Assembly: GCA_951406725.2 (NCBI GenBank)
Contig: OX597819.1
Coordinates: 93,268,001 to 93,392,000 of the forward strand
Length of the DNA: 124,000 bases
DNA from: Octopus vulgaris
Lineage: Eukaryota
Reading direction: 5' to 3'
A program made the translations under genes and the position numbers. Below the pieces are notes generated by a model. That model searched no databases and was not told where the DNA came from. It saw nothing but the letters and a program-made list of their open reading frames with translations. Position 1 is the first letter of the stretch, and each line of letters starts with the position of its first letter. This document shows positions 15,359 to 118,830 of this stretch, piece after piece.

Positions 15359-15525
15359 GTGTGAGTGTGTGTGTGTGTACGTGCGTGTGACCTGGTGTGA
15401 CTGACGATTTAATTTTTCCCTTATGCCACTACGTGGAACCTTGGCAAGTGTATTCTACTAGACCCTCGGGCCGAGCAAAGCCTTGTGCGATAATTTGGTG
15501 AACGGAAACTAAAAGAAGCCCGTCG

Positions 15526-15617
<92 letters not shown>

Positions 15618-15621
<4 letters not shown>

Positions 15622-16150
15622 CCCTTTCTGTAGAAGAGTGTAGGCTCGAAACGTAAAAGACTTTTTCTATTCCTGAGCTTTATACTGATACATCTGTTTG
15701 TTTTGTACACCACCTGTCTTTGTCTTTTGTTTTTTGCGTAAACTCTCCCTATATATATCACTCGCTCACGTGGTCACACATGTTGATCCTGTCATTTCTT
15801 ACCATTACGAACTTCTCCACTGGACTCTTTATCTACTCTTTATCTACCCTTTACGGATTCTCGTTTAGATATTTACCCTCCGGTTGCACCTCTCCTACCT
15901 ACGGATCATGGTGGAATCTACTCTTGATGAGAAATCCTTGCAATACACCGCGACGTAAAAAAAACCTTTGAACTTTACGTAAAACTGTTATTATTGTCAT
16001 TACTTTATTTTTATATTTACTTTTGTCCCTTTCTGTAGAAGAGCGTAGGCTCGAAACCTAAAAGACTTTCTCTATTCCTGAACGTTATACTAATACATCT
16101 GTGTTGTGTACACCACCTGACTTCGTCTTCTGTTTCTTTCGTAAACTCTC

Positions 16151-16152
<2 letters not shown>
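15618..16152 (+). mobile_element. Retrozyme-like element: two ~135-bp direct repeats, each with a hammerhead motif (15624-15659, 16029-16064), around a non-coding body
   Basis: Direct repeats ttgtccctttctgtagaagag..aaactctccc|tata. Motif cttt CTGTAGA a gag(c/t)-gtag-gctc GAAA c(g/c) T A aaag. Spacing 405 nt; (TA)n on both sides. Confidence 0.7.
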
Positions 16153-16217
<65 letters not shown>

Positions 16218-19200
16218 ATAAGTATGTATTTGGGTGTCTGTGTTTGTTTCTCCACCATCGCTTGACAACCAATGTTGGTGTATTTACGTCCCCGTAACTT
16301 AGCGTTTCGGCGAAAAAGACCGATAGAATAATTATTTGGCTTACAAACAATAATTCCTGGGGCCGATTCAATCGATAAAATGGGAGTGCTCCAATATAGT
16401 TGCAGTCAAATGACTGAAACGAGTAAAAGAATAAAAGAATACACACACATACACACACATATATTCGCATATACATAAGTGCATATAAACATGTTAATCA
16501 AGTATTTTTGTTAATATTTTTATTCGGATAATAATAATCATATGCATTCATAAGTAATTTGCTTGGTTCTATGTGCGAGACTAAGTATGTATGTGTCTGC
16601 AACGGATACTTTTTCTGTGCCGTGATCTTCAGCACAAAATTTTGTGTGAGCAAAGTTCAACAACTCGTTTTAGTATTCACTATTATCTGCTTTACTGATA
16701 CCACTTAATATCAGTATGAATATCATATAATCTTAACACAATTCTGCAGAAATCCATGTCCTCGTGTCATTATAAAATGAATCTATTGGATAATCCCTTT
16801 GTGGAATACCTCCCTATTCTAGATATTTTTTTAAAATATATACTAGAATAAATTGACGTGTGTTCTTTGTATTAATGTTGAATACGGTGATGGGGATCTC
16901 TCAGTGAAACCAGATTACAAATCCGTTTCAATCCTCAGAGAAGATTATTCTCGTGATTTGTAATACTTCTAGAAAGACTTTTCATCTGCTAGAAACACCA
17001 GTAATTTTTCTTTCAAATCCCATTTTGTCATCTTAAAAAAAAATGTTAGAACGCATTGTATAATAACGTTTCTAAGAGAGTCCTGTAAATAACTCGATGT
17101 TTAATGTTGGAATGTCTCAGGTCATAGATCAGTTGGACTAACGTAGACTTAGAGCTAAACAGCCACAACAGTAAGAAAGAACATCCATGTCACGTGATAG
17201 TCTAAATCAGAGGTTTCTAAGATTTCTGTAATCTTGTCCTCATTATTTCCTTCTGATGAACACACACGAAGCCCTTTATCTTTTTACCTTTTATCTTTTA
17301 CTTGCTTCAGTCATTGGGCTGCAACCATACTGGTGCACCACCTTGGAGGAGTTTAGTCGAACAAATCGACCTCAGTACTGTTTTTAATATTTTTAAGCCT
17401 AGTACCTAATCTCTCGGTCTTTTTACTGAAAAGCTTAGTTACGGGGCGAAAAATCCTAAAACATTTCTCAACTGATGACAGAGGAGAAACATAATACCAA
17501 AGATACACATATAGGTATATACATAAATGCACACACATGGATATATATGTATATATACACGCAACAGGCTTCTTTCAGTTTCCGTCGACCAAATCCAGTC
17601 ACAAGGCTTTGGTCGGCCTGAGGTTTTAATAGAAGACATTTTCGCAAGACCGCATCGCTGGAAAGCAAGCTTTTGGGGGGTTTTTTCGTCTTTTCTTAGT
17701 TGTATTAAGCTGAATTTTCGTAGCATCCGTGACTTCTGTCGATGATGCTCGGAATGGAAGTTCATAGACTACGTTTTTCTGATTATAAAAGTAATATTAT
17801 TTTTTCTCAATATATAGTCTGATTGCAGTAAATTTTAGCCACAAATTATTCTCTTACAGCGTAGAGCACAACTTGTAAATGCATTCATCGCTCTTTAATG
17901 ATTAAAAAATATATATAGCAGCTTTCATAGAATCCATTTCAATAGATCTGTTCGGTATAGTGTGATTACAATCCCAGACACCATTCTTTTCATAAGAAAA
18001 CTAATTTTTACACTATTCACTTAAACAACAAATAAATTACCTCTCTCAAACTTGACAGAACAAGTTTATCAAATTACATTGCGAGTTTGTCTCAAATGAT
18101 GTTATCCTATTGACCCAACAAAACCCACAGCTGGCTGAGTGCTGAACAACCAACATAAAATCAATGGGAACATGACTTTGTCCTAAACAAGTAAACTCAG
18201 TTGCTAATAGTTCAAAATACGCTGCGTAAAATAATATAATGGAGTGTGTACTACTACGTTGTAAGCAATGGAAAAGTTTAATCTATATTTTATGAACTTA
18301 CAGTAATGTTATAGTATTTAACCTGTGGATAAATATTAGTTTCATATCCGGCACAAAGCCAGCAGTTTCGAGAAGGAGTAAGTAGATTACATCGTTCCCA
18401 GTACTCCACTAGGACTTATTTCATGGACCCCGTAAGGCAAAGTCGACCTCGGTGAAATTTGAACTTAGAACCTAAAGATGGACGAAATGCTAACGATTCT
18501 GCCAGCTCACCGCTTTCCAGTGGAAAAATATTAAAACTAACGCTGATTAATTAGGAAAGTAATAAAGAAAGCAAGCGATACATTACTAAATCGCCTTTGC
18601 ACTGTGATCAATGAAATCTGAAACGGTGACTTGCATATTTATTCTCAATAAGTTCCGATAGATTCGAACGTAAATAGGCTTATCGCTGTTAGGTAACAGA
18701 AGAACAGCTTCTCCTTTTTCTGACGACAATGTTTTCATAGCACCACTCGGCTTAAGGGACTTTGGGACACTAGTGTTTCGACATGTAGTGTCTTGTTAGT
18801 CAGAAAATATAAACAAGAGTCATTGGCTTTATTTAATTTTTTTTTTTTGTTTTGACTCAAAGGTTTGGGTATTTCTGACTGGCGAGACATATGTCAAAAC
18901 GTTGATTTCCCAATTTCCCTTGCACTAATGAGTCGAGTGTGTTATGAAGATCTTATTGTAAAAACAATAAGCTGTTCTCATGTGACGAACACAATAGCGA
19001 TTAGCATATTTATTTCGAATCTACCAGAGCGTATTGAGAATAAAATTATGCATCTTTATTCACACTGCCATTATGCTTCTGTGCTGAAGTGTGCGATTGC
19101 AGAATGTTACTGTTGTCGTTATAATAGAATTTCTAGAATTTATTTATCTAAAGATGATTATCTCCGCAAAGTACATTTATTTCATTTTCTAGTGCTACAC

Positions 19201-20327: not shown

Positions 20328-21590
20328 AAAGGCGGCGAGCTGGCAGAAACGTTAGCACACCGGGCGAAATGCTTAGCGGTATTTCGTCTGCCGTTACGTT
20401 CTGAGTTCAAATTCCGCCGAGGTCGACTTTGCTTTTCATCCTTTCGGGGTCGATTAAATAAGTACCAGTTATGCACTGGGATCGATGTAATCAACTTAAT
20501 CCGTTTGTCTGTCTTTGTTTGTCCTCTCTGTGTTTAGCCCCTTGTGGGTAGTAAAGAAATAGGTATTTCGTCTGCCGCTACGTTCTGTGTTCAAATTCCA
20601 CCAAGGTCGACTTTGCCTTTCATCCTTTCGGGGTCGATAAATTAAGTACCAGTTACGCACTGTGGTTGATGTAATCGACTTAATCCGTTTGTCTGTCCTT
20701 GTTTGTCCTCTCTGTGTATAGCCTCTTGTGGACAGTAAAGAAATAGGTATTTCGTTTGCCGCTGCGTTGTGTTCAAATTCCGCCGAGGTTGACTATACCT
20801 TTCATCCTTTCGGTACTTATTAAATAAGTACCAGGATACGCACTGGGGTCGATGCCATCGAATTAACCCGGCCTCGAAAATTTCGGGCCTTGTGCCTATA
20901 ATAGAAAGGATTATTACTGTTAAAACGGCGATCTGGCAGAATCGTTAGCACGCCACGGCGGAATACTCAGCGGTATTTCGTCCATCGCCACGTTCTGAGT
21001 TCAAACACCGCGGAGTTGACTTTGCTTTTCAATCTTTCAGGTCGATTAAATAAGTAACAATTGAGTACTGGGGTCGATCTAATCGACTTTCCCTCTCCCC
21101 CAAAATTTCGGACCTTGTGCTTATAGAAGAAAAGAATTGAGTACTGGGGTTGTTGTAATCAACTAGCCCCACGCTTACAAACTTTCAGGCTTTGTGCCTA
21201 TAGCAGAAACGATTTTTATCATTATTATTATTAAAGCGGCGAGCTGGCGCACTGGAAAAAAAATACTTAGCGGCATTTCGTCCGTCTTTACGTTCTGAGT
21301 TCAAATTCCACCGAGGTCGATTTTGCCCTTCATCTTTTCAGGGTCAATTAAGTAAGTACCAGTTGATCACTGGGGTTGATGCAACCGACTATCCTCCTCC
21401 CACAAAACTTCATCCCTTGTGCCAATAGTAGAAAGGATCATTATTATTATTTTTTTATGAAAGCCTGTGAGCTGGTAGAATCTTTATCAGGGCGGGCGAA
21501 ATGCTTGACGGTATTTCGTCTGCCGTCACGTTCTGAGTTCAAATTCCGCCGAGGTCGACTTTGCCTTTCATCCTTTTGGGGTCGATAATG
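20328..21590 (+). mobile_element. Tandem array of about six SINE family A copies
   Basis: Repeated AAATTCCGCCGAGGTCGACTTTG..AGTACCAG units at about 200-nt spacing. Confidence 0.85.
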
Positions 21591-44700: not shown

Positions 44701-47700
44701 CGCTCAAGGATTAAACGTTTACTTTTAGTCATATGTTTGAACAAAAAAGGAAGTGTCTTGATAGAACAAGCAACTGAGTCTAGCAAGTGAATTAAAATCA
44801 ATTATCGGTACCGTATAAAGACAGAACTGAGACGATTGTGAAGAAGTTGATATTCACAAGAACAGCACTGCTGTAATATCGTGTCAAGGAATATTTACCA
44901 TTTCGATTAGCAAAAGGAAATTACGAAACCTCTCAATCTAAAACGTTAATGCGCTTGGCTAGTAGAATTTTATTCAGCTGAACAATAACTGGTACCATAG
45001 AGTCTGTTATTGAAGTTAGAAGCATCCGCGTTATTTCCTCTCTTAATGATCCCCTGTGAACCTTAAAAGGTAGAGTTGCAGAATTTAGATAATTGCTTAA
45101 CATGTAAACATTTGAAGAATCCACAAAGATGCTGACTAGAGGTCCTACTAGAAGAACAAGATTTGAATTAATTCTCTTCTATGTGAATGTGGGTTTTTCT
45201 CTGTTCTTTGCCTCTGTCTTTAGCAAACCTCCTCTCAAAATTATATAAACGTATTTAACGTGCATTATAGGCTGTAAAGTGTAATTTCTTTTCCAAATTT
45301 AAAGCAAACCTCTTCAATATCATTATCCAAGTATCTCAATGTGGTGAGCTGGCAGAATAGTTAGCGCGCCGAACGAAATACTTAACGTCATTTAGACCGG
45401 CTTCGCCTTCGTAGTTCAAATTCCGTCTAGGTCGACTTTGCCTTTCATCCTTTCGGGGTCGATAAAATAAATACGTGTTGAACACTGGGATCGTTATGAT
45501 CGACTTACCCACAACCCCAGAATAGCTGGCTTCGGGCCAAAAATTGAAATCAATATTATTATATAAGTTTTATCTTTTAATTGTGTCAGTCATTGGACTG
45601 CGGCCGTGCTGGAGCATCACCTTGTAAGGTTTTAGTCAAATAAATTGACCACGATACTTATTTTAAAATCTGTCACTTATTCTATTGGTGCATTTTGCCG
45701 AACCGCTAAAGACGTGAGCATACCAACACCGGTTGTGAAGCGGTGGGGATAAGCACAAAACAACCATTCATAGATACGCACGCACGGACAAATACACACA
45801 CACACACACATACGACGGTCTTCCGCACACTCTCCCACTACCAAATTCACTCACAAGGCATTGGTCAATCCGAGACTGTAATCTAAAATATGCCAGAAGT
45901 GCCACGCAGAAGAAATGCTTCTGTACCATACCGCCTGTGGCTGCAAAGTGCTTCTGAACTACACAGCTGTACCTGCACTCTATGAGAAATAACAAGTCTT
46001 CTTGGCTATTTTAATAAATCTGCATAGATAATGTTACTCTATATAGGAACTATTATATTGAGGAGAAATAACCATTATTTCATGCATTCTCTTTCTAAGT
46101 TCTTTTGAGTTTTTGCCGTGAATCTCCAGTCGTATACAAATACTTCAAGTTAATTTTTCATGGTTACTACAGTAATCTAAGCAAACATGCACATGAACAA
46201 CCCATAAGCATGCACGCATGCACACATGCACACAACACATATTTATATAAGTATTGGAACACATTCTCTTGAATATTCAATCAGTTAAAAATACATACGA
46301 AGTATCGTAAGCAAGATATTAGTCATCAAGAAAGTTATAGAACGGAATATTGGATAACTAAGAATTAAAAAGGTTAATTATAGTGAAATTAAAACCAAAT
46401 TTTTTAAAAAGACAAGAATTGCACGACTGTCATTGGTTAATTTTAAACTACCTGTCTTAAAATTTAGAGCTGAAGGAATTGAATTATTGTTAAACATGTA
46501 AACGTGGGCGTTTTTAATCATGTGCTATTTGAATGTAAGATTTACTTTACGAAGAATACTTGTAGTCGTATTCAAGTTCTTTAGCTTTTGCTTGTTCATT
46601 GAGTCGAAAAAGCAATATTCTCAATGCTTAAAATTTAATTTAGGAAAACGAACTGTCTTTTCTTGCATAAAGAAGACCAGTAAAGGCATTCAAATTCTAC
46701 GGCCATTTTACTACAACCAAATGACGTACGGAATTCACGCTATGGTTTGAGCTGATAAACGCTTGAGACTTGAACGTGGTGAAATTGGTATTGAGTTTCC
46801 CTAGATGATTTAGGAAGGTAAAATAGGACAATAAAATATTAGGCAATTTTCTTCCATTACTAATGACATATGATAACATACGCTTTTTTCTTTACAGATC
46901 TAAATAACAGCTGCTCTATTTTATCGCTTTTGCTTCTTGCAGTATATTGTAATTCAGCTGCATTCTTTTCTTTAGTTTTTCTATAAATTTTTCATTAATT
47001 TACCAATCTTTAATGATCATAACACTCTTGTGATGTAAATGATCTTGCCATACTGACGTGAGAAATTGTAATATGATGAAGTTTCTAGCCTAACACATTA
47101 AAGTAGACACACTTTTGCGTTAATTGCAGTTAATCAATAGTATCAAATTTGTCTTAAATCAATTCTTTGAGGAACTACAATTGTCGTATGGATTAATTGT
47201 GCTGTTGTTGTTACTGGTATATTTTCTCTTTGCACCCATTCCAAGTACATCCTCAGAACCGAGCAGAAAATATGGTTCCAATCGTGATGCTTCTCTAATA
47301 TTGTCTAGGTCAGCGAGCCTCATATCTTTATTACTTATGTTCCTTCGTATTTAGATCATTCTAATATTATACAATAGCTGGCTTTGTGATAAAAACTTGA
47401 AAGTATTATGAACACAATAGATAAAATGGCCAACTGGCAGAATCGTAAGCATGCTGAGCAAAATGCTTTGCGGGATTTCGTCCGCCCTTACTTACGGAAG
47501 TTGACTTTGCATTTCATCCTTTCGAGGTCGATAAAATAAGCACTTGATGAACACTGGAGATGATGTAATCGACTAATCCCCTCCCCCGAAATTGCTGGCC
47601 TTGTGCAAAAAATTTTAAACCGATATTAATATGATAGATAAGGTGGCACGCTGGTACAATTGTTATGGCACCAGACAAAATGCTTAGCGATATTTTTTTC

Positions 47701-54423: not shown

Positions 54424-55009
54424 GTCGTATGTGTATAAGCAGTAAAAATGTTACCGTTACTTTCGCACTGACTATTTTCACGATTTTTGAGACATATTGG
54501 CCGGAAACGCATTGCCACCTTTGTACGGGACACTAGGTTCACTTGTTGGTAGTAAAAACTGAAGAAGCTCTGTAACTATGAGTGCAGAGGTGTATGCGTG
54601 TGATATATGTGTGCGTGTGTGTCGTTCCCTAGTTCAAATTCCAGGAATGTTAAGTTGCATAGATGAATTTATTTGAAATTTTCACCTAAAATGTCTTTGC
54701 ATATTGCTGCATCTTCAAACTTCTTGCACTTCAGGATAAATTTCCTTTCTTTGAGGCTTAGTCCGTCTCTCTTCAATATTTCTAAAAGGTTAAACCAAAA
54801 AAGAAATGAAAACTAAGTGGTCATCTGTAAAAATGTGTAAACATTTTATTGGAACACCCTGTGTGTATATGGACAGATAGATACATACATGCATGCATGC
54901 ATGCATACATACATACATGCATACATACATACATACATACATACATACATAGGGGAGAATTAAAAAAAAAACAAAGACGAAGAGAGGCGGTGTAGACAAC
55001 AAACAGATC

Positions 55010-55125
55010 TATTGGTATAATGCTCGGGAATTGAAAAAGTCTTTAACGTTTCGAGCCTTCGCTCTTCCACAGAAAGGAACACAGAAAGAAACAAGGGGAG
55101 AGAATAAAGAGAGAAAATAAAGATA
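55010..55125 (-). mobile_element. Short hammerhead-bearing element (CUGUNGA family); ribozyme 55041-55076
   Basis: Minus strand: cttt CTGTGGA a gagc-gaag-gctc GAAA cg T T aaag. Confidence 0.65.
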
Positions 55126-55787: not shown

Positions 55788-57294
55788 GTGCATCTGTATA
55801 TGTATGTATATGTGTATACGTATATATATATGTGCGCGCGCGAGTGTGTGCATGTGTGTGTGTGTATATATATATGTATACATGTATGTATGCATGCATA
55901 CGTATGTATGTATGTATGCATGCGTATGTATGTATGCATGCATACGTATTTATGTATGTATGCATGCATACGTATTTATGTATGTATGCATGTATGTATG
56001 TATGTATGTATGTATGTATGTATGTATGTATGTATGTATGTATGTATGTATGTGCAAGTATATGGTGCACTGGACTGATCAATGTATAAGTTGATAATAT
56101 GGGTGGATTCACAGATGGATGGAAAAATGAATGGAGGAATTTGCACAAATTCTTCTACAGAAGGATAGCCGAAAAAAAAATGGTAGCTTCCTATATTATA
56201 TTTAACCTTCTGTCAGCCAATATTTTCGCACTGCGTAGCGGCAAAGATTACTAATAATATAACCTAAATCCATCAGCTTAAAGTTTGGGGTTTCCTCAGA
56301 CTACAACGGCTATAAATAGCACAGCATCTGGATCTGCTAAGAAGAGGCTGTTGATGATAACTGAGTTTTTATACTTTTTCCTCTGTTGTTTTATATGTAT
56401 TTATTTTAAGGTGGGTGGGTTTCTCTTGATAATGTATGCGTTACTTGGTGCCCGTCTGTAACTGTGTATGAATATATGTATGTAGGTTTGCGTGTAGCGC
56501 CGACACGTCCTACTTCTCTCTTTTCCTTTCCCTCTCTCTCGACCTACTCTTTCTCACTCTATCTCCATTCATTGCTGTGTATGTTTCTCTATATCTGCCC
56601 ATACATATACACTTACACACACAACATATATATGCACGTATATATTCATCCATACATATTACACATGCACATACGCACGAGTCTACGTTTTTTTTGTTTT
56701 GTTTTTTTTTTAAGGCAAGTTCTCTCAACAAACAAGGGGATTTTCTCTTTCGGCAAAGAATTAACTTTTGAAGTAACAGACCTGCCCTTAGTACAAATAC
56801 ATAGGTTTCAAATTTTGGCACAAGGCCTGTAATTTCGCACGAGGGGTAAGTCGATTCCATCCATCCCAGTTTTCCACACGCACTTATTTTATCGACCTCC
56901 GAAAAGATAAAATTAAAGCAGACTGCTGTGGTATTTGAACTCCGAACGTAAAGACGGACGAAATACAACAAAGTAGTTTTGCCGGAGTCCTTACGATTCT
57001 GCCAGTTCACAACCTCGGAAATGCAGCTATGTTATCATATATATATATATATATTCTCATTAACCATACACATATAACAGGTATTTAGCACTGATTACGA
57101 ACCAATATACTAAAAAAAAAAAGATATGTAATAGGGTCCGTAATTTACATTTGAATAGGTTTGGTCATCAATTGAAATAAGGTTTTGCACAAATGGATGT
57201 ACAAATGGTCTAAGATAGCTTTTAAAAAAATGAAGAAAACTTGGGAGTATGAGTATTCCTGAAATCGATGAGGCATCATACATACATACATACA

Positions 57295-58003: not shown

Positions 58004-59179
58004 ATGGGAACGAGGTTTGCTCCCGTTTACGCCAACTCTGTAATGGGATACTTAGAAGAACAACTCTACCAAGAGGTGGAGGTAAACTATGGCACTGGAT
58101 TTAGAAAGTATATTGAAAAGGCATGGAAGAGATACCTAGACGACTGTTTCATAATCTGGACAGAATCTCTAAATACTCTGGAAGAGTTCAATATCCTCCT
58201 GAACAACCTACACCCATCTCTCAAATTTACAAAGGAGATGAGTAGTACCAAATTACCATTCCTGGATATAATGGTAATTAAAAAAGACACCACCATCACC
58301 ACAGATATATACTATAAACACACAGACACACATCAATACCTAAATTTTAAGTCGTGCCATCCACCACATACAAAACGTAACATCCCATACTGCCTAGCCA
58401 GAAGAATTTGTACTATTGTAGAAGATGCAAATATCAGGAACAAACGCCTAATAGAACTAAGAGAATTTTTGCTCAAACAAAAATACCCATCTCTACTTAT
58501 AGAAAATGGCATACAGCGGGCTATAAAAATACCTATACAACAACTTAGGACAACCCAAGGAAGAGGAAAACAAGAACAAGTCATACCATTCATAGTGACA
58601 CACAACCCATGTCACCAGAATATCTTCAACATTGCCAAAGCAAACCTACCAATCATTGCCCAAAGTAATGAATTAAAAGACATAATCAAGGATCGAGCTA
58701 TGGTGCTTAGTAAAAGACAGCCTAAAAACTTGAAAACATTACTAACAAAGGCTAAATTTGACCTCAGCAACAAAGACCAAACATTCACGGTATCTAAATG
58801 CAATGATAGCCGATGTGGCACATGCCAATTCATACATACCGGTCAATATATAAACACAAAAACCGGGAAAATATTCACAAACGCGAATATGAACTGCAAA
58901 AGCAGAAATTTAATTTACTGCATCAAATGCCCAAATTGTGAAGAAATATATGTAGGTCAGACGGGAAACGCACTATTAGAACGCTCACGTGTACACCGGC
59001 AACAGATTAGAGACCCAGAGGTCCGTCAGATACCTTTGAGTAACCACCTAGCAACATGTGGTCGGAAAATATATATAATATTTCCATTCTACAAATTACA
59101 CAGCCCAAGTGAAATCGAGAGGAAAATCAGAGAAAAGAATTTTATTGATAAATTCGAACCCAAGCTAAATAAGCAATAA
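58004..59179 (+). CDS. PLE RT (C-terminal half) plus GIY-YIG endonuclease, 391 aa, N-terminally truncated
   Basis: MGTRFAPVYANSVMG, WKRYLDDCF, CNDSRCGTC linker, NLIYCIKCPNC..YVGQT..LERSRVH. No stops. Confidence 0.9.
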   Translation: MGTRFAPVYANSVMGYLEEQLYQEVEVNYGTGFRKYIEKAWKRYLDDCFIIWTESLNTLEEFNILLNNLHPSLKFTKEMSSTKLPFLDIMVIKKDTTITTDIYYKHTDTHQYLNFKSCHPPHTKRNIPYCLARRICTIVEDANIRNKRLIELREFLLKQKYPSLLIENGIQRAIKIPIQQLRTTQGRGKQEQVIPFIVTHNPCHQNIFNIAKANLPIIAQSNELKDIIKDRAMVLSKRQPKNLKTLLTKAKFDLSNKDQTFTVSKCNDSRCGTCQFIHTGQYINTKTGKIFTNANMNCKSRNLIYCIKCPNCEEIYVGQTGNALLERSRVHRQQIRDPEVRQIPLSNHLATCGRKIYIIFPFYKLHSPSEIERKIREKNFIDKFEPKLNKQ

Positions 59180-75614: not shown

Positions 75615-75870
75615 CTGAGACACGTTTTTCACCATTTATTCTTCTTATCTGTAAAAGAGCGTAGGCGCGATAAGTTGAATAAACTCTCTTTGATATTCTT
75701 TCACACCCTTTTGCTTTTCGCATGTTTGAATCTATATATATTTATGCATACATATATGTATATGATCCAACCATGCCAAAAGCAAAATGAATGGTGTGAA
75801 AGAACATCAAAGTAAGGGTGTTAGTTCAACGTTTCGAGCCTACGCGCTTCTACAGAAAAAGAAAAAAACG
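75615..75870. mobile_element. Tail-to-tail pair of CUGUNGA-family hammerhead elements (75649-75680 +, degenerate; 75825-75858 -)
   Basis: Minus strand: ttt CTGTAGA a gcgc-gtag-gctc GAAA cg T T gaa. Arms are reverse-complementary. Confidence 0.65.
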
Positions 75871-75899
75871 TGTCTCAATATATATATGTAGAAAAAGAC

Positions 75900-80239: not shown

Positions 80240-80625
80240 TACTCCTTTACTCCTTTACTTGTTTCAGTCATTTGACTGCGACTGTGCTGGAGCACCGCCT
80301 TTAGTCGAGCAAATCGACCCCAGGACTTATTCTTTGTAAGCCTAGTACTTATTCTATCGTACTAGAATAAGTACTAAATAACGGGGATGTAAACACACCA
80401 GCATCGGTTGTCAAGCGATGCTGGGAGGAGAAACACAGACACACAAACATATACACGCACACACATACATATGTACGACGGGCTTCTTTCAGTTTTCGTC
80501 TACCAAATCCATTCACAAGGCTTTGGTTAGCCCGAGGCTATAGTAGAAGACACTTGCCCAAGGTGCTACGCAGTGGGACTGAACCCGGAACCATGTGGTT
80601 CGTAAGCAAGCTACTTACCACACAT
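80240..80625 (-). mobile_element. SINE family C
   Basis: Reverse complement of the consensus; inverted relative to 81144-81575. Confidence 0.8.
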
Positions 80626-81143: not shown

Positions 81144-81315
81144 TGTAGGAGTGGCTGTGTGGTAAGTAGCTTGCTTACGAACCATATGGTTCCGGGTTCA
81201 GTCCCACTGCGTGGCACCTTCGGCAACTGTCTTCTACTAATAGCCTCGGGCCGACCAAAGCCTTGTGAGTGGATTCGGTAGACGGAAACTGAAAGAAGCC
81301 CGTTGTATATATGTG

Positions 81316-81367
<52 letters not shown>

Positions 81368-81575
81368 TGTGTCTGTGTTTGTCACCCCAACATCGCTTGA
81401 CAACCGATGCTGGTGTGTTTACGTCCTCGTAACTTAGTGGTTCGACAAAAGACACCTTTATAATAAGCACTAGGCTTACAAAGAATAAGTCCTGGGGTCG
81501 ATTTGCACGACTAAAGGCAGTGCTCCAGCATGGCCACAGTCAAATGACTGAAACAAGTAAACGAGTAAAAGAGTA
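81144..81575 (+). mobile_element. SINE family C, full length
   Basis: GTAGGAGTGGCTGTGTGGTAAG..AAACAAGTAAACGAGTAAAAGAG. Confidence 0.85.
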
Positions 81576-105329: not shown

Positions 105330-105560
105330 GACGAATTTGAAGCTTTCAAAATGTGACCGCGTGTGTACCGTTGGCAATTTTTTTTCCTCCGTCTTCCCTT
105401 CTCTGGATCTTCCCTTTTCCTATGTTTCTGACGAAGAGCTCCGCTCGAAACGTAAAACCCTCCTTCTTCCCTTCCTGAGCGTCCAGTAATACTATATTTG
105501 TTCCACGTCCTCGCGTTGTGTTTTCTCTTGGTGTTTTCATGTTTGGATTAACTTTATATA
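105330..105560 (+). mobile_element. Hammerhead-bearing element family H1; ribozyme 105424-105458
   Basis: gttt CTGACGA a gagc-tcc-gctc GAAA cg T A aaac, intact core. Ends at (TA)n. Confidence 0.8.
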
Positions 105561-106704: not shown

Positions 106705-107600
106705 GTGGCGGTGAGTAGACAGAATCGTTACCACGTCGGATAAATGCTAAACGGCATTTCTCCCTATCTTGCGTTCTAAGTTCTCATTCCACCGAGGTCG
106801 ACTTTGCCTTTTATCTTGTCAGGATCGATAAAATAAGTACCGGTTGAGCGCTGGGGGGTTAATGTAATCGACTTATCCTTCCCCTTTGACATTGCTGGTC
106901 TAGTGCCAAATTTTAAAATCATTAATTAAATAATTGAATTACAAGCACGTAGAGTGATTCGAATTGAATATTGCTAATGGTATTATTTACCAGTCATAAA
107001 GCGGTGAGCTTTCAAAATCGTTAGCGGCATTTCGTCCGTCGTTACGTTCGGAGTTCAAATTCCGCCGAGGTCGACTTTGCCTTTCATTCTTTTGGGGTCG
107101 ATAAATTAAGTACCTATGAAACACTGAGGTTGATGTAGTCGACTAGTCCCCTCCCCGCCTCACCCAAATGTCAGGCCTTTAGTAGAAAGGATTAGTTAGC
107201 AGTCATAAGGCGGTGAGTTGGCAGACTCGTTAGCACTTCGAGCAAAATGCTTAGCGGCATTTCGTCCGCCGTTACGTTTTGAGTTCAAATACTCAGGAGG
107301 TTGACTTTGACTTTTATCCTTTCAGGATCGATAAAATAAGTACACTTTGAACACTGGCGACGATGTAATCGACTAATCCTCTTGTCCAAAATTTCAGGCC
107401 TTTTTACCTAGAGCAGAAAGGATTATTTACCAGTCTTATAAGGAATCAGTTGGCCGAGTTGTCTGAGTGTCGAAAAAAAGAGAATTGTTTTGTAGTATTT
107501 CTTCCGGAACTTTATAATCTGAGGTTCGAATTTCGCCGAGGTTAGCTTTGCTTTTTACCCAACTGGAAGATGAAAATCAGTACCAGTCACGTACTGGACA
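106705..107600 (+). mobile_element. Tandem array of 4-5 SINE family A copies
   Basis: Repeated consensus units separated by ..AGAAAGGATTA..CAGTC. Confidence 0.8.
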
Positions 107601-116860: not shown

Positions 116861-118419
116861 CTTCTTGCGACGGACGCAATATCTTTCAGAGTTGATAATA
116901 CCTGGAATCGTTGATGTCTGCTGGGCTGTGAAGGTTTACGCTCTAACCCAACTTAAAAAGTACTAACAGCACCACGATTCATTTGGAATTCTCAGTCGTC
117001 GTCTCTTGCTGGGAGAAGCCTTTGAGCCATCTGTGTCAGTCAACTGAATTCAGTATTTGATGGAGACATATTTTTGTTACATCCAGTAAAATGAAAGATC
117101 CTCGAAAGCATTTGAACTCCAAACGTAAAGAACGTAACTACAGCAGCTCTAACGGTCCTGCCAGTTTACCAGTCATCAGCAAAATGGTGAAACGGAACTA
117201 AAGTTTTACAAATTTTCAAAGGAGAAACTATCTCAAATTTATGAGTTTTTAAAATTTAAAGATCCCTAGTTTGTAAAAGATAACAGGACTTTGAATTATT
117301 CTGCATCTATTGACTTCACGTTCTGAGTTCAAATTACGCCGTGGCCGACTTTGGACTTCATTCACTTGGGGTTCGATAAAATAAGTACTAGTTAAGTATC
117401 GGGGTCGATGTAACTGACCATCCCCCTCCCCATTTCCAGCCTTGTGCTTGCAGTAGAAGCGATTATTTCTAACATAAACAAAGCAGCGAGTCGGACAAAA
117501 TGCCTAGCAGCATTTATTTCGACTCTTTATATAATGAGGACAAATTGCGCCAAGATCGTTTTCGCCTTTCATTCTTTCAGGGTCGATGAAATAAGTACCA
117601 GTCAAGTACTGAAGTCTTGGTTGTCAACTAAACCCCACCCCTAAAAATTGCTGGCCTTGTGCAAAAATTAGGATAAACTCGTTCAGACATAAGCACAAAA
117701 CCTGAAAGTTAGAGAATAGAATTCGTCGATTAAATCAACATCTTACTTTATTTATGCCACACCAAAGTTGGTTCTAGGAAGATTTGAACTCGAAACCAAT
117801 GCGATGATAATTGCTTGTAAAGGCGGTGAGCTGGCAGAAACGTTAGCGCGCCGGGCTAAATGCTTAGCGGTATTTCATCTGTCTTTACGTTCTGAGTTCA
117901 AATTCCGCCAAGATTGACTTTAACTTTTCATCCTTTCGGGATCGATAAATTAAGTACCAGTTGCGCACTGGGGTCGATCTAATCAACTGCTCCCTCCCCC
118001 AAATTTCGGGTTTCGTGCCTAGAGTAGAAAAGGTTAATAATTGCTTATAATATAAGGACGAGGCCAGAAATTGGCGAGTTGATTATATCCATCCCAATGT
118101 TCGACTGGCACTTATTTCATCAACGCCGAAAAGATTTAAGGTCGACCTCAATGGAATTTGAATTCACAGCGCTAAGACTGACAAAATTCTACAAAGCATA
118201 TTGTCTGTATGTAAACGATTCTGATATCAATTGTATGAAAGCAAGAGCGATAACAATTGATAGAAAAGTAGATAGATATACGTACATACGATTGTGTGCG
118301 CGCGCATGCCTGAATGCGTTTTGAACATATATATTAAGAATCTCAGATGAGTAGGAAGAGGACGAGACGTTTAGGCGGTGGAGCAGATGTCAGTTTGATT
118401 TAATGCCAGAGCTCGAATA

Positions 118420-118830
118420 ACTCTCTTTACTCTTTTACTTGTTTCAGTTATTTGACTGCGGCCATGCTGGAGCACCGCCTTTAGTCGAGCAAATCGACCC
118501 CAGGACTTATTCTTTGTAAGCCTAGTTCTTATTCTATCGGCCTCCTTTTCCCGAACCGCTAAGTTACGGGACATAAACACACTAGCATCGGTTGTCAAGC
118601 GATGTTGGGGGGACAAACACATACACACAAACACATACACAACACATTATATATACATATACATATATACGACGGGCTTCTTTCAGTTTCCGTCTACCAA
118701 ATCCACTCACAAGGCTTTGGTCGGCCTGAGGCTATAGCAGAAAACACTTGTCCAAGGTGCCACGCAGTGGGACTGAACCCGGAACCATGTGGTTGGCAAG
118801 CAAGCTACTTACCACACAACCACTCCTGTG
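118420..118830 (-). mobile_element. SINE family C
   Basis: Reverse complement of the consensus. Confidence 0.85.

What the first reader, a model, noticed from the sequence alone, without database searches (positions are those of the whole stretch)
15618..16152. Retrozyme-like unit: hammerhead direct repeats 405 nt apart around a non-coding body
Seen: two ~135-bp direct repeats, each with the same hammerhead motif, bracket about 265 bp with no meaningful ORF. The unit sits in (TA)n, and solo repeats occur at 55010, 71740 and 75615-75870. Known: retrozymes are non-autonomous retroelements whose two ribozymes release a monomer that circularises. Inference: a read-through transcript would give a 405-nt linear or circular RNA, a candidate cephalopod retrozyme mobilised by PLE RT.
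Basis: partly seen in the sequence, partly recalled or inferred. Interest (0 to 1): 0.78.

Follow-up and report, generated by a model that had tools for sequence, protein, structure and literature searches.

The report
Penelope-type repeat pair, hammerhead-like motifs
Two copies of a short interspersed repeat carrying a Penelope-retroelement-style minimal hammerhead-like motif, plus 264 bp of single-copy DNA between them, were inserted into one TA microsatellite; it is a fairly ordinary retroelement layout, and the ribozyme cores are mutated at an essential base, so a self-cleaved RNA circle is unlikely.

Summary
The repeats are real. They span 15618-15758 and 16023-16161, are 89-91% identical, lie 405 nt apart in the same orientation, and have (TA)n on both outer sides. 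Each carries a Penelope-like-element (PLE) "minimal hammerhead" layout. However, the first catalytic box reads CUGUAGA, with U at the invariant A6. All seven members of this subfamily share that U. Copy B also lacks the C15.2-G16.2 pair.

New evidence: the two outer flanks are the two halves of another repeat ("R"). In seven paralogous R copies the halves are separated only by 20-130 nt of TA/TG microsatellite. The whole 544-bp repeat-body-repeat block is therefore inserted DNA in one microsatellite, and the body is not local flanking sequence.

The body has no second copy in the 124-kb window, and no outside genome data could be reached. Repeat A is no closer to B than to a solo copy 56 kb away. 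The predicted 405-nt RNA folds no better than shuffled sequence.

Best reading: a non-autonomous PLE-type insertion in a pseudo-LTR (partial tandem) layout, with degenerate hammerheads. It is a new member of a known kind. A circle-forming retrozyme is not shown and is unlikely at this locus.

The parts
15426..15529 (+). Upstream half of an older host repeat 'R'. It ends ...GAAGCCCGTCGTATG, next to R's internal microsatellite.
   Evidence: blastn finds 9 other copies in the window. In 7 of them this half is followed, after only 20-130 nt of TA/TG repeat, by the sequence found here at 16225-16440.
15530..15617 (.). (TA)n, the left part of the target microsatellite.
15618..15749 (+). Repeat A: a 'headless' copy of the family unit. 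It starts at TTGTCCC and ends at CTCTCCC.
   Evidence: It lacks the ~75-nt 5' head that copies C, D, E, G, H and I have.
15624..15659 (+). Hammerhead-like motif of A: helix I 15624-15627 / 15656-15659; box 1 15628-15634 (CTGTAGA, U6 at 15631); extra A at 15635; helix II 15636-15639 / 15644-15647; GAAA 15648-15651; C15.2-G16.2 at 15652-15653; U16.1 at 15654; A17 at 15655.
   Evidence: Passes the strict minimal-hammerhead descriptor except for A6. The helix II and helix I hairpins appear in the minimum-free-energy fold. Pair counts across 10 family members: 88% of cells paired, against 20-49% when the partners are slid.
15750..15758 (.). TATATATAT between repeat A and the body. It is either a remnant of the target or the 3' tail of A.
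   Evidence: Every family copy abuts a TA-type microsatellite at its 3' end.
15759..16022 (+). Body: 264 nt, non-coding, single copy in the window, joined directly to repeat B.
   Evidence: No other hit by blastn or nhmmer --max at E<=10. The 83-aa ORF has no homologue. The body is absent from the 7 paralogous empty sites.
16023..16152 (+). Repeat B: a second headless copy with the same 5' start (TTGTCCC).
   Evidence: There is no head homology upstream of it.
16029..16064 (+). Hammerhead-like motif of B: box 1 16033-16039 (U6 at 16036), 16.2 = C at 16058 (pair with C15.2 lost), A17 at 16060.
   Evidence: (fails the strict descriptor)
16153..16229 (.). (TA)n, the right part of the target microsatellite.
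16225..16440 (+). Downstream half of host repeat R.
71693..71886 (+). Solo full-length family copy C (92% identical to A). It has (TA)n on both sides. Box 1 is CTGTAAA.
54945..55123 (-). Solo copy D, with (TGTA)n on both sides. Box 1 is CTGTGGA.
61515..61708 (-). Older copy E (71% identical to A). Box 1 is CTGTCGA. The helix II pair 10.3-11.3 has changed from G-C to C-G.
105352..105555 (+). Sister-subfamily copy G with a canonical core (CTGACGA); (TA)n at its 3' end. Its close relative H is at 13150-13350(-).
58004..59179 (+). PLE ORF remnant (C-terminal part with a GIY-YIG endonuclease domain). A second remnant is at 5651-6850(+).
   Evidence: Pfam GIY-YIG, E = 9e-6 and 6e-4. 51-61% identical to molluscan RT+GIY-YIG proteins.

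Best explanation
The 132/130-bp repeats are 5'-shortened copies of a ~200-bp non-coding interspersed repeat family. Its most conserved part is a Penelope-type minimal hammerhead-like module. The family is probably copied in trans by the reverse transcriptase and GIY-YIG endonuclease of Penelope-like elements (PLEs), by target-primed reverse transcription at TA-rich microsatellites.

The block repeat A - TATATATAT - 264-bp body - repeat B is inserted DNA inside the single internal microsatellite of an older repeat. It was most likely laid down in one PLE-style event. In that event the enzyme, after copying a longer template (body + B), jumps to the 3' end of a second template and copies A. That produces the pseudo-LTR (partial tandem) layout typical of PLEs.

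The hammerhead-like motifs in this subfamily carry U at the invariant A6, and B has also lost the 15.2-16.2 pair. Efficient double self-cleavage to a 405-nt linear or circular RNA is therefore not expected from this locus.

Shown: the repeats, the motif anatomy, the empty sites, the microsatellite association, and the PLE remnants.
Inferred: mobilisation by PLE enzymes, origin in a single event, and poor catalysis.
For: - Repeats and family.
- The descriptor gives 0 hits in 100 shuffles.
- Across 10 members, 88% of helix cells pair, against 20-49% when the partners are slid. Three pairs show compensatory change.
- The hammerhead-like segment is more conserved than the rest of the unit between subfamilies: A-E 78% vs 52% (p = 0.004); A-G 72% vs 43% (p = 0.001).
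- Empty sites: the joined flanks align colinearly with paralogous R copies, which have only TA/TG repeat at the insertion point.
- The body is joined to B with no TA remnant between them, whereas a TA remnant follows A.
- A and B share orientation, subfamily and 5' start.
- All ~11 superfamily members abut a TA-type microsatellite at their 3' end.
- PLE ORF remnants with GIY-YIG are in the window.
- An inverted pair of the same motif lies at 75617-75885. Tandem, inverted and solo layouts are the PLE pattern (PMC8557442, PMC4209133).
- Related PLE loci carry CTGAAGA...GAAA motifs with a 6-7-bp helix I, 130-235 nt after the ORF stop (read by eye).
- U6 is expected to be deleterious (PMC9901934, PMC3088659).
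Against: - No sequence homology was found between the unit and the 3' regions of the two PLE remnants in the window, so the autonomous partner is not identified.
- A is no closer to B (91%) than to solo copy C (92%), so the data do not single out a common insertion event.
- A starts exactly where B's homology to the short family starts, which the simple 'truncated upstream copy of a long element' version does not explain.
- The body was seen only once, so a long element (body + B) is hypothetical.
- U6 is shared by lineages as diverged as 71%, while the other core bases and helix II are kept. This could mean the variant motif still has a function.
Confidence: 0.55

Rival explanations
1. One reading: a working retrozyme. 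A read-through transcript is cut by both hammerheads, and the 405-nt monomer is ligated into a circle that serves as the template for PLE-mediated retrotransposition.
For: - Two same-strand hammerhead-like motifs 405 nt apart, within the 170-400-nt size range and low GC (37.5%) reported for animal retrozymes (PMC7229834).
- The block is inserted DNA.
- The motif is under constraint across subfamilies.
- The U6 lineage kept amplifying, which would fit a tolerated variant.
Against: - U at A6 in both copies; B lacks the 15.2-16.2 pair.
- There is no helix III and no loop-loop contacts, and such minimal motifs cleave poorly even with canonical cores (PMC4209133).
- The insertion boundaries (TTGTCCC ... 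CTCTCCC) do not coincide with the cleavage site.
- The 405-nt RNA is not unusually structured.
- There is no second copy of the body and no multimers in the window.
- The second repeat ends exactly at the unit's own 3' end, as in solo copies, rather than at an arbitrary point of a tandem array.
Confidence: 0.1
2. Two separate insertions into the same microsatellite: a 5'-truncated unit (A), and later or earlier a longer relative (body + B) 9 nt downstream. The pair was never mobile as a unit.
For: - A TA remnant separates A from the body, as expected for target sequence left between two hits.
- Solo copies with the same 3' boundary are mobile on their own.
- A is as similar to solo copy C as to B.
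- TA tracts are the preferred targets and are extremely dense: 159 tracts, median gap 272 bp.
Against: - It needs two hits of the same young subfamily in one of ~159 tracts, in the same orientation, 9 nt apart. With three young copies this is roughly 1% by my estimate.
- It also needs A to be truncated at the very nucleotide where B's family homology begins.
Confidence: 0.25
3. A one-off chimera. During one retrotransposition, the reverse transcriptase reached the 5' end of a headless unit RNA (B), switched to an unrelated cellular RNA (the body), then switched to a second unit RNA (A). The body would be a captured sequence, not part of a family.
For: - It explains why A and B have identical 5' ends, why the body is single-copy in the window, and why the TA tail lies between A and the body.
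- The partial-tandem copies typical of PLEs (PMC8557442, PMC4209133) have been explained by more-than-unit-length reverse transcription (PMC4209133).
Against: - There is no evidence that the body is transcribed elsewhere. It has no protein or RNA-family match.
- A headless unit RNA is itself hypothetical.
Confidence: 0.12
4. The unit is an ordinary pol III (tRNA-derived) SINE, and GGCTCGAAAC is a B box. The hammerhead resemblance would be a coincidence.
For: - GGCTCGAAAC resembles the B-box consensus GGTTCGANNCC (my reading).
- The unit is SINE-sized.
Against: - No tRNA was found by ARAGORN, and there is no tRNA, 5S or 7SL Rfam hit anywhere in the window.
- The full descriptor (helix I, box 1, bulge, helix II, GAAA, palindrome, UH) is never met in shuffles.
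- The helices covary.
- The sister subfamily has the exact CUGACGA box.
Confidence: 0.04

Closest known systems
Minimal hammerhead motifs in the pseudo-LTRs of Penelope-like elements and their dispersed truncated copies (Cervera & de la Pena 2014, PMC4209133; Craig et al. 2021, PMC8557442)
   Same: - Type I layout without helix III, an unpaired nucleotide after A9, G10.1-C11.1, palindromic 15.2-16.2, and a short helix I.
- Motifs occur in direct flanking repeats, as inverted pairs 100-700 bp apart, and mostly as solo copies.
- TA-microsatellite targets.
- PLE RT/GIY-YIG genes in the same genome.
   Different: - Box 1 has U instead of A6 in this subfamily.
- The internal region is 264 bp of non-coding DNA rather than an RT-EN ORF.
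- No sequence link to a particular autonomous PLE was found.
Animal non-LTR retrozymes (Cervera & de la Pena 2020, PMC7229834; Li, Clavereau & Pollet 2026, bioRxiv 10.64898/2026.07.22.740005)
   Same: - Non-coding, low GC, two same-strand type I hammerhead-like motifs a few hundred nt apart.
- Proposed dependence on PLE enzymes.
   Different: - Retrozymes are head-to-tail arrays of whole monomers (dimers up to 62-mers) with canonical, usually active, hammerheads and demonstrated circular RNAs.
- Here there are only 1.3 'monomers', and the second repeat stops at the unit's own end.
- The cores are non-canonical, and no RNA evidence exists.
Plant LTR retrozymes (Cervera et al. 2016, PMC4918200)
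   Same: Repeat - non-coding body - repeat, with a hammerhead motif in each repeat.
   Different: Plant elements have type III hammerheads, ~350-bp LTRs, a primer binding site (PBS), a polypurine tract (PPT) and 4-bp target-site duplications. None of these is present here.
Schistosoma Sm-alpha, a SINE-like repeat with a hammerhead (Ferbeyre et al. 1998, as cited in PMC6155905)
   Same: A short, abundant, non-coding interspersed repeat carrying a type I hammerhead.
   Different: Sm-alpha has a canonical, active hammerhead with helix III, and a pol III-type head. Neither was found here.

Membership tests
Hammerhead ribozyme, PLE minimal type | Box 1 = CUGANGA (C3 U4 G5 A6 N7 G8 A9) | tested here: not met
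   A and B read CUGUAGA (U6). All 7 members of the subfamily have U6, and C also has G8->A. The sister subfamily (G, H, I) has CUGACGA.
Hammerhead ribozyme, PLE minimal type | Box 2 = GAAA, followed by the A15.1-U16.1 pair and a non-G base at position 17 | tested here: met
   CGAAAC is invariant in 10 of 10 members. U16.1 is present in 9 of 10. H17 is A in both A and B.
Hammerhead ribozyme, PLE minimal type | [quoted passage not shown] | tested here: met
   A|GAG(U/C)-GUAG-GCUC. G-C at 10.1-11.1 in 9 of 10 members. One compensatory change, G-C to C-G, at 10.3-11.3.
Hammerhead ribozyme, PLE minimal type | Palindromic 15.2-16.2, needed for the dimeric helix III | tested here: inconclusive
   Met in A (C-G). 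Not met in B (C-C, position 16058).
Hammerhead ribozyme, PLE minimal type | Helix I of 4-6 bp flanking the core | tested here: met
   CUUU/AAAG, 4 bp, extendable through a 2-nt bulge by GUC/GAC. 87.5% of cells paired across members.
Hammerhead ribozyme, PLE minimal type | Self-cleavage at the predicted site | not testable with these tools
   Needs an in vitro transcription assay. The literature predicts low activity for changes at A6 (PMC9901934, PMC3088659).
Animal non-LTR retrozyme | Head-to-tail tandem array of whole monomers, each with a type I hammerhead | tested here: not met
   There is only repeat-body-repeat (1.34 units), and the second repeat ends at the unit's own 3' end, as in solo copies. 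There are no multimers in the window.
Animal non-LTR retrozyme | Monomer of ~170-400 nt with low GC | tested here: met
   405 nt from cleavage site to cleavage site; GC 37.5%.
Animal non-LTR retrozyme | Many genomic copies of the whole monomer | tested here: inconclusive
   The body is single-copy in 124 kb. The source genome could not be reached: 0 hits in the three collections, and the protein searches found nothing from the source species, only distant relatives at 61% identity or less.
Animal non-LTR retrozyme | Expression as linear and circular unit-length RNA | not testable with these tools
   No RNA data. The predicted RNA is no more stable than shuffles (z = +0.76).
Plant LTR retrozyme | Type III hammerhead in the LTRs, a PBS after the 5' LTR, and a PPT before the 3' LTR | tested here: not met
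   The motif is type I (open helix I). The sequence after A is CACTCGCTCACG, which is not a tRNA-Met PBS. The sequence before B is T-rich, not a purine tract.
PLE-type non-autonomous insertion (pseudo-LTR layout) | Direct repeats carrying the hammerhead motif, flanking an internal region, inserted as a block | tested here: met
   Repeats. Block insertion shown by 7 paralogous empty sites.
PLE-type non-autonomous insertion (pseudo-LTR layout) | Insertion bias for TA-type microsatellites | tested here: met
   All ~11 members abut (TA)n, (TATG)n or (CATA)n at the 3' end. A-B, C and D have the same microsatellite on both sides.
PLE-type non-autonomous insertion (pseudo-LTR layout) | Autonomous PLE (RT + GIY-YIG) in the same genome, sharing the terminal repeat | tested here: inconclusive
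   PLE ORF remnants are present, but neither has a recognisable unit or hammerhead at its 3' side in the window.

The most novel reading that the evidence does not exclude
The CUGUNGA (U6) motif is not decay but a maintained natural variant of the PLE minimal hammerhead. It is shared by lineages down to 71% identity, while every other core base, helix I and helix II are kept, one helix II pair by a compensatory change. Either it still cleaves in vivo, which would make this block a molluscan pseudo-LTR-type retrozyme yielding a ~405-nt RNA, or the module has a non-catalytic role such as recognition by the PLE reverse transcriptase.
Probability: 0.1. Interest if true: 0.6.

Novelty: new member of a known kind. 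Interest (0 to 1): 0.3.

Why it matters
If the block proves to be a multi-copy element, it would be a very small Penelope-dependent non-autonomous retroelement with pseudo-LTRs. That would bridge dispersed PLE minimal hammerheads and the tandem animal retrozymes recently argued to derive from PLE pseudo-LTRs (bioRxiv 10.64898/2026.07.22.740005).

The persistence of a U6 core through several rounds of amplification also bears on an open question raised in PMC8557442: whether hammerhead catalysis is needed for PLE-type retrotransposition at all.

As it stands, the locus is one more example of a described pattern, and it does not by itself make either question testable without genome-wide and RNA data.

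Tried and rejected
- Rfam at gathering thresholds over the whole window, and at E<=10 over the locus: no hammerhead hit. I rejected this as evidence against a hammerhead, because the canonical-core relative is also missed.
- Exact-pattern scans for the unit's motif in the metagenome, prokaryote-genome and viral collections: 0 hits each.
- Protein search with the 83-aa ORF that runs from the end of repeat A through most of the body: nothing.
- Search with the PLE ORF, to reach more of the same genome: the best hits were 61% identical or less, so the source species is not in the collection and no further loci of this genome could be fetched.
- Two related PLE loci were fetched. The strict descriptor found no hammerhead in them. 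Hammerhead-like motifs downstream of the ORFs were seen only by eye.
- nhmmer with the body, and with a profile of the family's 5' head: the body has no relative, and B has no head.
- Tree-like comparison of A, B and C: star-like, not informative about one event versus two.
- tRNA-SINE idea: no tRNA found.
- An early idea that solo copies are 1.25-mers with a duplicated 3' tail was dropped. The CT-rich 5' region plus the head GTGTAYCGTTGGCRA proved to be a regular part of the full-length unit.
- An 11/12 match between the reverse complement of the body's first bases and the family head was judged post hoc and not significant by nhmmer.

Full report
**1. The observation**

The sequence shows two direct repeats, 15618-15758 and 16023-16161, with start-to-start spacing of 405 nt.
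- blastn gives 89% identity (E 1e-49), and gap-free columns give 91%.
- Each repeat core ends at CTCTCCC (15749 and 16152).
- A is followed by TATATATAT (15750-15758), then by 264 nt (15759-16022) that run straight into B.
- (TA)n lies outside on both sides (15530-15617, and from 16153).
- The longest ORF in the interval is 83 aa with a TTG start, and it has no protein homologue.

- C 71693-71886(+)
- D 54945-55123(-)
- E 61515-61708(-)
- an inverted pair, 75617-75687(+) and 75825-75885(-)
- a sister subfamily: G 105352-105555(+), H 13150-13350(-), I 101121-101260(+)
- two decayed copies near 2750-2915(+) and 67960-68100(-)

So the anatomy is real and far beyond chance.

**2. The "hammerhead"**

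No Rfam hammerhead model matches, either at gathering score over the whole window or at E<=10 over the locus. This says nothing. The relative at 105428 has a perfect CUGACGA...GAAA core and is also missed, because these motifs lack helix III.

The right yardstick is the minimal hammerhead that Cervera & de la Pena found in the flanking repeats of Penelope-like elements (PLEs) (PMC4209133). [quoted passage not shown]

Repeat A reads CUUU|CUGUAGA|A|GAGU-GUAG-GCUC|GAAA|CG|UA^AAAG. Every feature is there except one: position 6 is U, not the invariant A.

- A strict descriptor finds A, D (both U6) and G (canonical) in the window, and nothing in 100 dinucleotide shuffles.
- B fails the descriptor because 16.2 is C. 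C fails because G8 is A.
- Across ten members, 88% of helix cells pair, against 20-49% with slid partners. Three pairs show changes on both sides.
- Between subfamilies, the 40-nt motif is significantly better conserved than the rest of the unit. A-E: 78% vs 52%, p = 0.004. A-G: 72% vs 43%, p = 0.001.

The module is therefore a real, constrained, hammerhead-type structure. But U6 is expected to cripple it:
- All mutants in the CUGA turn except the C3-G8 swap had low activity in a complete single- and double-mutant scan (PMC9901934).
- A natural A6C variant cleaved at <0.1 min^-1 (PMC3088659).
- Even canonical PLE minimal hammerheads cleave poorly, and only as dimers (PMC4209133).
- In a dimer of A and B, one of the two composite helix III pairings would be broken by B's C16.2.

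**3. What the block sits in**

This was the most informative result. The sequence left of the upstream (TA)n (15426-15529) and the sequence right of the downstream (TA)n (16225-16440) are two halves of one other repeat, R.
- In seven other copies in the window, the two halves are adjacent, in the same order and orientation. They are separated only by 20-130 nt of TA/TG microsatellite.
- The joined flanks align colinearly with four of these paralogues.

These are empty sites. The whole 544 bp, A + TA + body + B, was inserted into one microsatellite.

The body is therefore not native DNA lying between two independent solo insertions. It matters because TA tracts are so dense here (159 tracts, median gap 272 bp) that "two tracts 264 bp apart" would otherwise have been the default explanation.

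**4. One event or two?**

The body is joined to B without any TA remnant, while a TA remnant separates A from the body. The minimum is therefore one event (the composite) or two ([A] and [body + B]).

For a single event:
- A and B have the same orientation and belong to the same young subfamily.
- They lie 9 nt apart within one of about 159 tracts.
- Both repeats start at the same nucleotide (TTGTCCC) and lack the ~75-nt head (GTGTAYCGTTGGCRA plus a CT-rich stretch) that C, D, E, G, H and I carry.

This is the partial-tandem, pseudo-LTR layout that PLE integration typically produces. The window also holds the inverted-pair and solo layouts described for PLEs (PMC8557442, PMC4209133).

Against, or neutral:
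- A is as close to solo copy C (92%) as to B (91%), and the three form a star.
- The body has no other copy in the window by blastn or nhmmer.

The second point has little power, because 124 kb is a tiny sample of what is probably a far larger genome. I could not reach more of it. Pattern scans of three collections found nothing. The PLE ORF's best relatives are only 51-61% identical (bivalves; Argonauta 47%), so the source species is not in the protein collection.

**5. Link to PLEs**

- Two ORF remnants (5651-6850 and 58004-59179) end in a GIY-YIG domain. They match molluscan RT+GIY-YIG proteins.
- All family members abut a TA-type microsatellite at the 3' end. Three insertions (A-B, C, D) have the same microsatellite on both sides, and D's is (TGTA)n, so the repeat is target, not element.
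- (TA)n preference is documented for PLE clades (PMC8557442).
- Two related PLE loci from public contigs carry CTGAAGA...GAAA + a 4-nt palindrome + UU, with a 6-7-bp helix I, 130-235 nt after the stop codon. I read these by eye, and they fail my strict descriptor.
- I found no sequence homology between the unit and the 3' sides of the PLE remnants in the window. The autonomous partner is inferred, not shown.

**6. The retrozyme reading**

Animal retrozymes are tandem arrays of whole 170-400-nt monomers with canonical type I hammerheads and demonstrated circular RNAs (PMC7229834). They have recently been argued to derive from PLE pseudo-LTRs (bioRxiv 10.64898/2026.07.22.740005).
- The present block shares the size (405 nt), the low GC (37.5%) and the two same-strand motifs.
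- It is not a tandem array: the second repeat stops at the unit's own end.
- Its cores are non-canonical.
- Its insertion boundaries do not coincide with the cleavage sites.
- The predicted 405-nt RNA folds no better than shuffles (z = +0.76).
- The plant LTR-retrozyme features (type III motif, PBS, PPT) are absent.

So it resembles a retrozyme in layout. Several defining features fail, and others cannot be tested here.

**7. An observation that remains open**

U6 is shared by seven members, including E, which is only 71% identical to A. All other core bases are kept, and in E the helix II pair 10.3-11.3 has changed from G-C to C-G. The U6 lineage therefore went on amplifying through at least three subfamilies.

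Either catalysis is dispensable for this family's spread, or U6 is tolerated in vivo. The first option fits the remark that Naiad PLEs thrive without hammerheads (PMC8557442). I give the second option about 10%.

**8. Verdict**

- Observation: mostly confirmed.
- Interpretation: partly supported. The locus is a PLE-type, hammerhead-motif-bearing, non-coding composite insertion. It is not a demonstrated or likely circle-forming retrozyme.
- Novelty: a new member of a known kind.
- Interest: 0.3.

Noticed in passing
15426-15529 + 16225-16440; also 81204-81572(+), 118426-118770(-), 41651-41991(-), 80243-80576(-), 70183-70595(+), 11902-12317(+), 17288-17641(-): An interspersed repeat 'R' of about 340-400 bp, built as two conserved halves around an internal TA/TG microsatellite of variable length. 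At least 8 copies are in the window. One of them is the host of the finding.
   Followed up: partly
whole window: TA microsatellites are extremely dense: 159 merged (TA)n>=6 tracts in 124 kb, with a median gap of 272 bp. Any argument based on 'sits in (TA)n' needs this background rate.
   Followed up: yes
75617-75885: An inverted pair of hammerhead-like arms. Both start TGAGACACGTTTTT. One arm keeps CGAAAC and the other has decayed to CGATAAG. They surround a ~135-nt spacer with TA-rich DNA on both sides. This matches the 'dual motifs on opposite strands' layout described for PLEs.
   Followed up: partly
5188-5652 and 7369-7821; ORF 5651-6850: A PLE ORF remnant (GIY-YIG) whose upstream 465 bp is repeated in inverted orientation 500 bp downstream of the ORF (79% identity). 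This is a complex PLE insertion or a rearrangement.
   Followed up: no
60018-60160(+), 61740-61877(-), 62474-62780(+), 63194-63433(-): Another short repeat, beginning AAACTTACTTGGAAA.GGATGCGTGGCGTTC and next to microsatellites. One copy lies directly upstream of family copy E.
   Followed up: no
56800-57010 and at least 15 other places (e.g. 21259-21434, 47432-47624, 68319-68527, 107213-107402, 117826-118030): An abundant ~200-bp interspersed repeat family, unrelated to the finding.
   Followed up: no
61586-61629(-) compared with 15620-15663(+): Hammerhead position 6 is U in all seven members of this subfamily, including the 71%-diverged copy E. Helix II pair 10.3-11.3 is G-C in A-D and C-G in E. 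This suggests a maintained non-canonical core rather than random decay.
   Followed up: partly
L001 6078-6127; L002 3636-3690: Related PLE loci from public metagenome contigs have CTGAAGA...GAAA, then a 4-nt palindrome (GCGC or GTAC), then TT, flanked by a perfect 6-7-bp helix I, 130-235 nt after the ORF stop. Their helix II is irregular: a 3' bulged G in one, a U-U closing mismatch in the other.
   Followed up: partly
15759-15786: The reverse complement of the first bases of the body (GTGACCACGTG...) matches the start of the family's 5' head (GTGACCGCGTG) at 11 of 12 positions. I noticed this post hoc, and it is not significant by nhmmer.
   Followed up: partly
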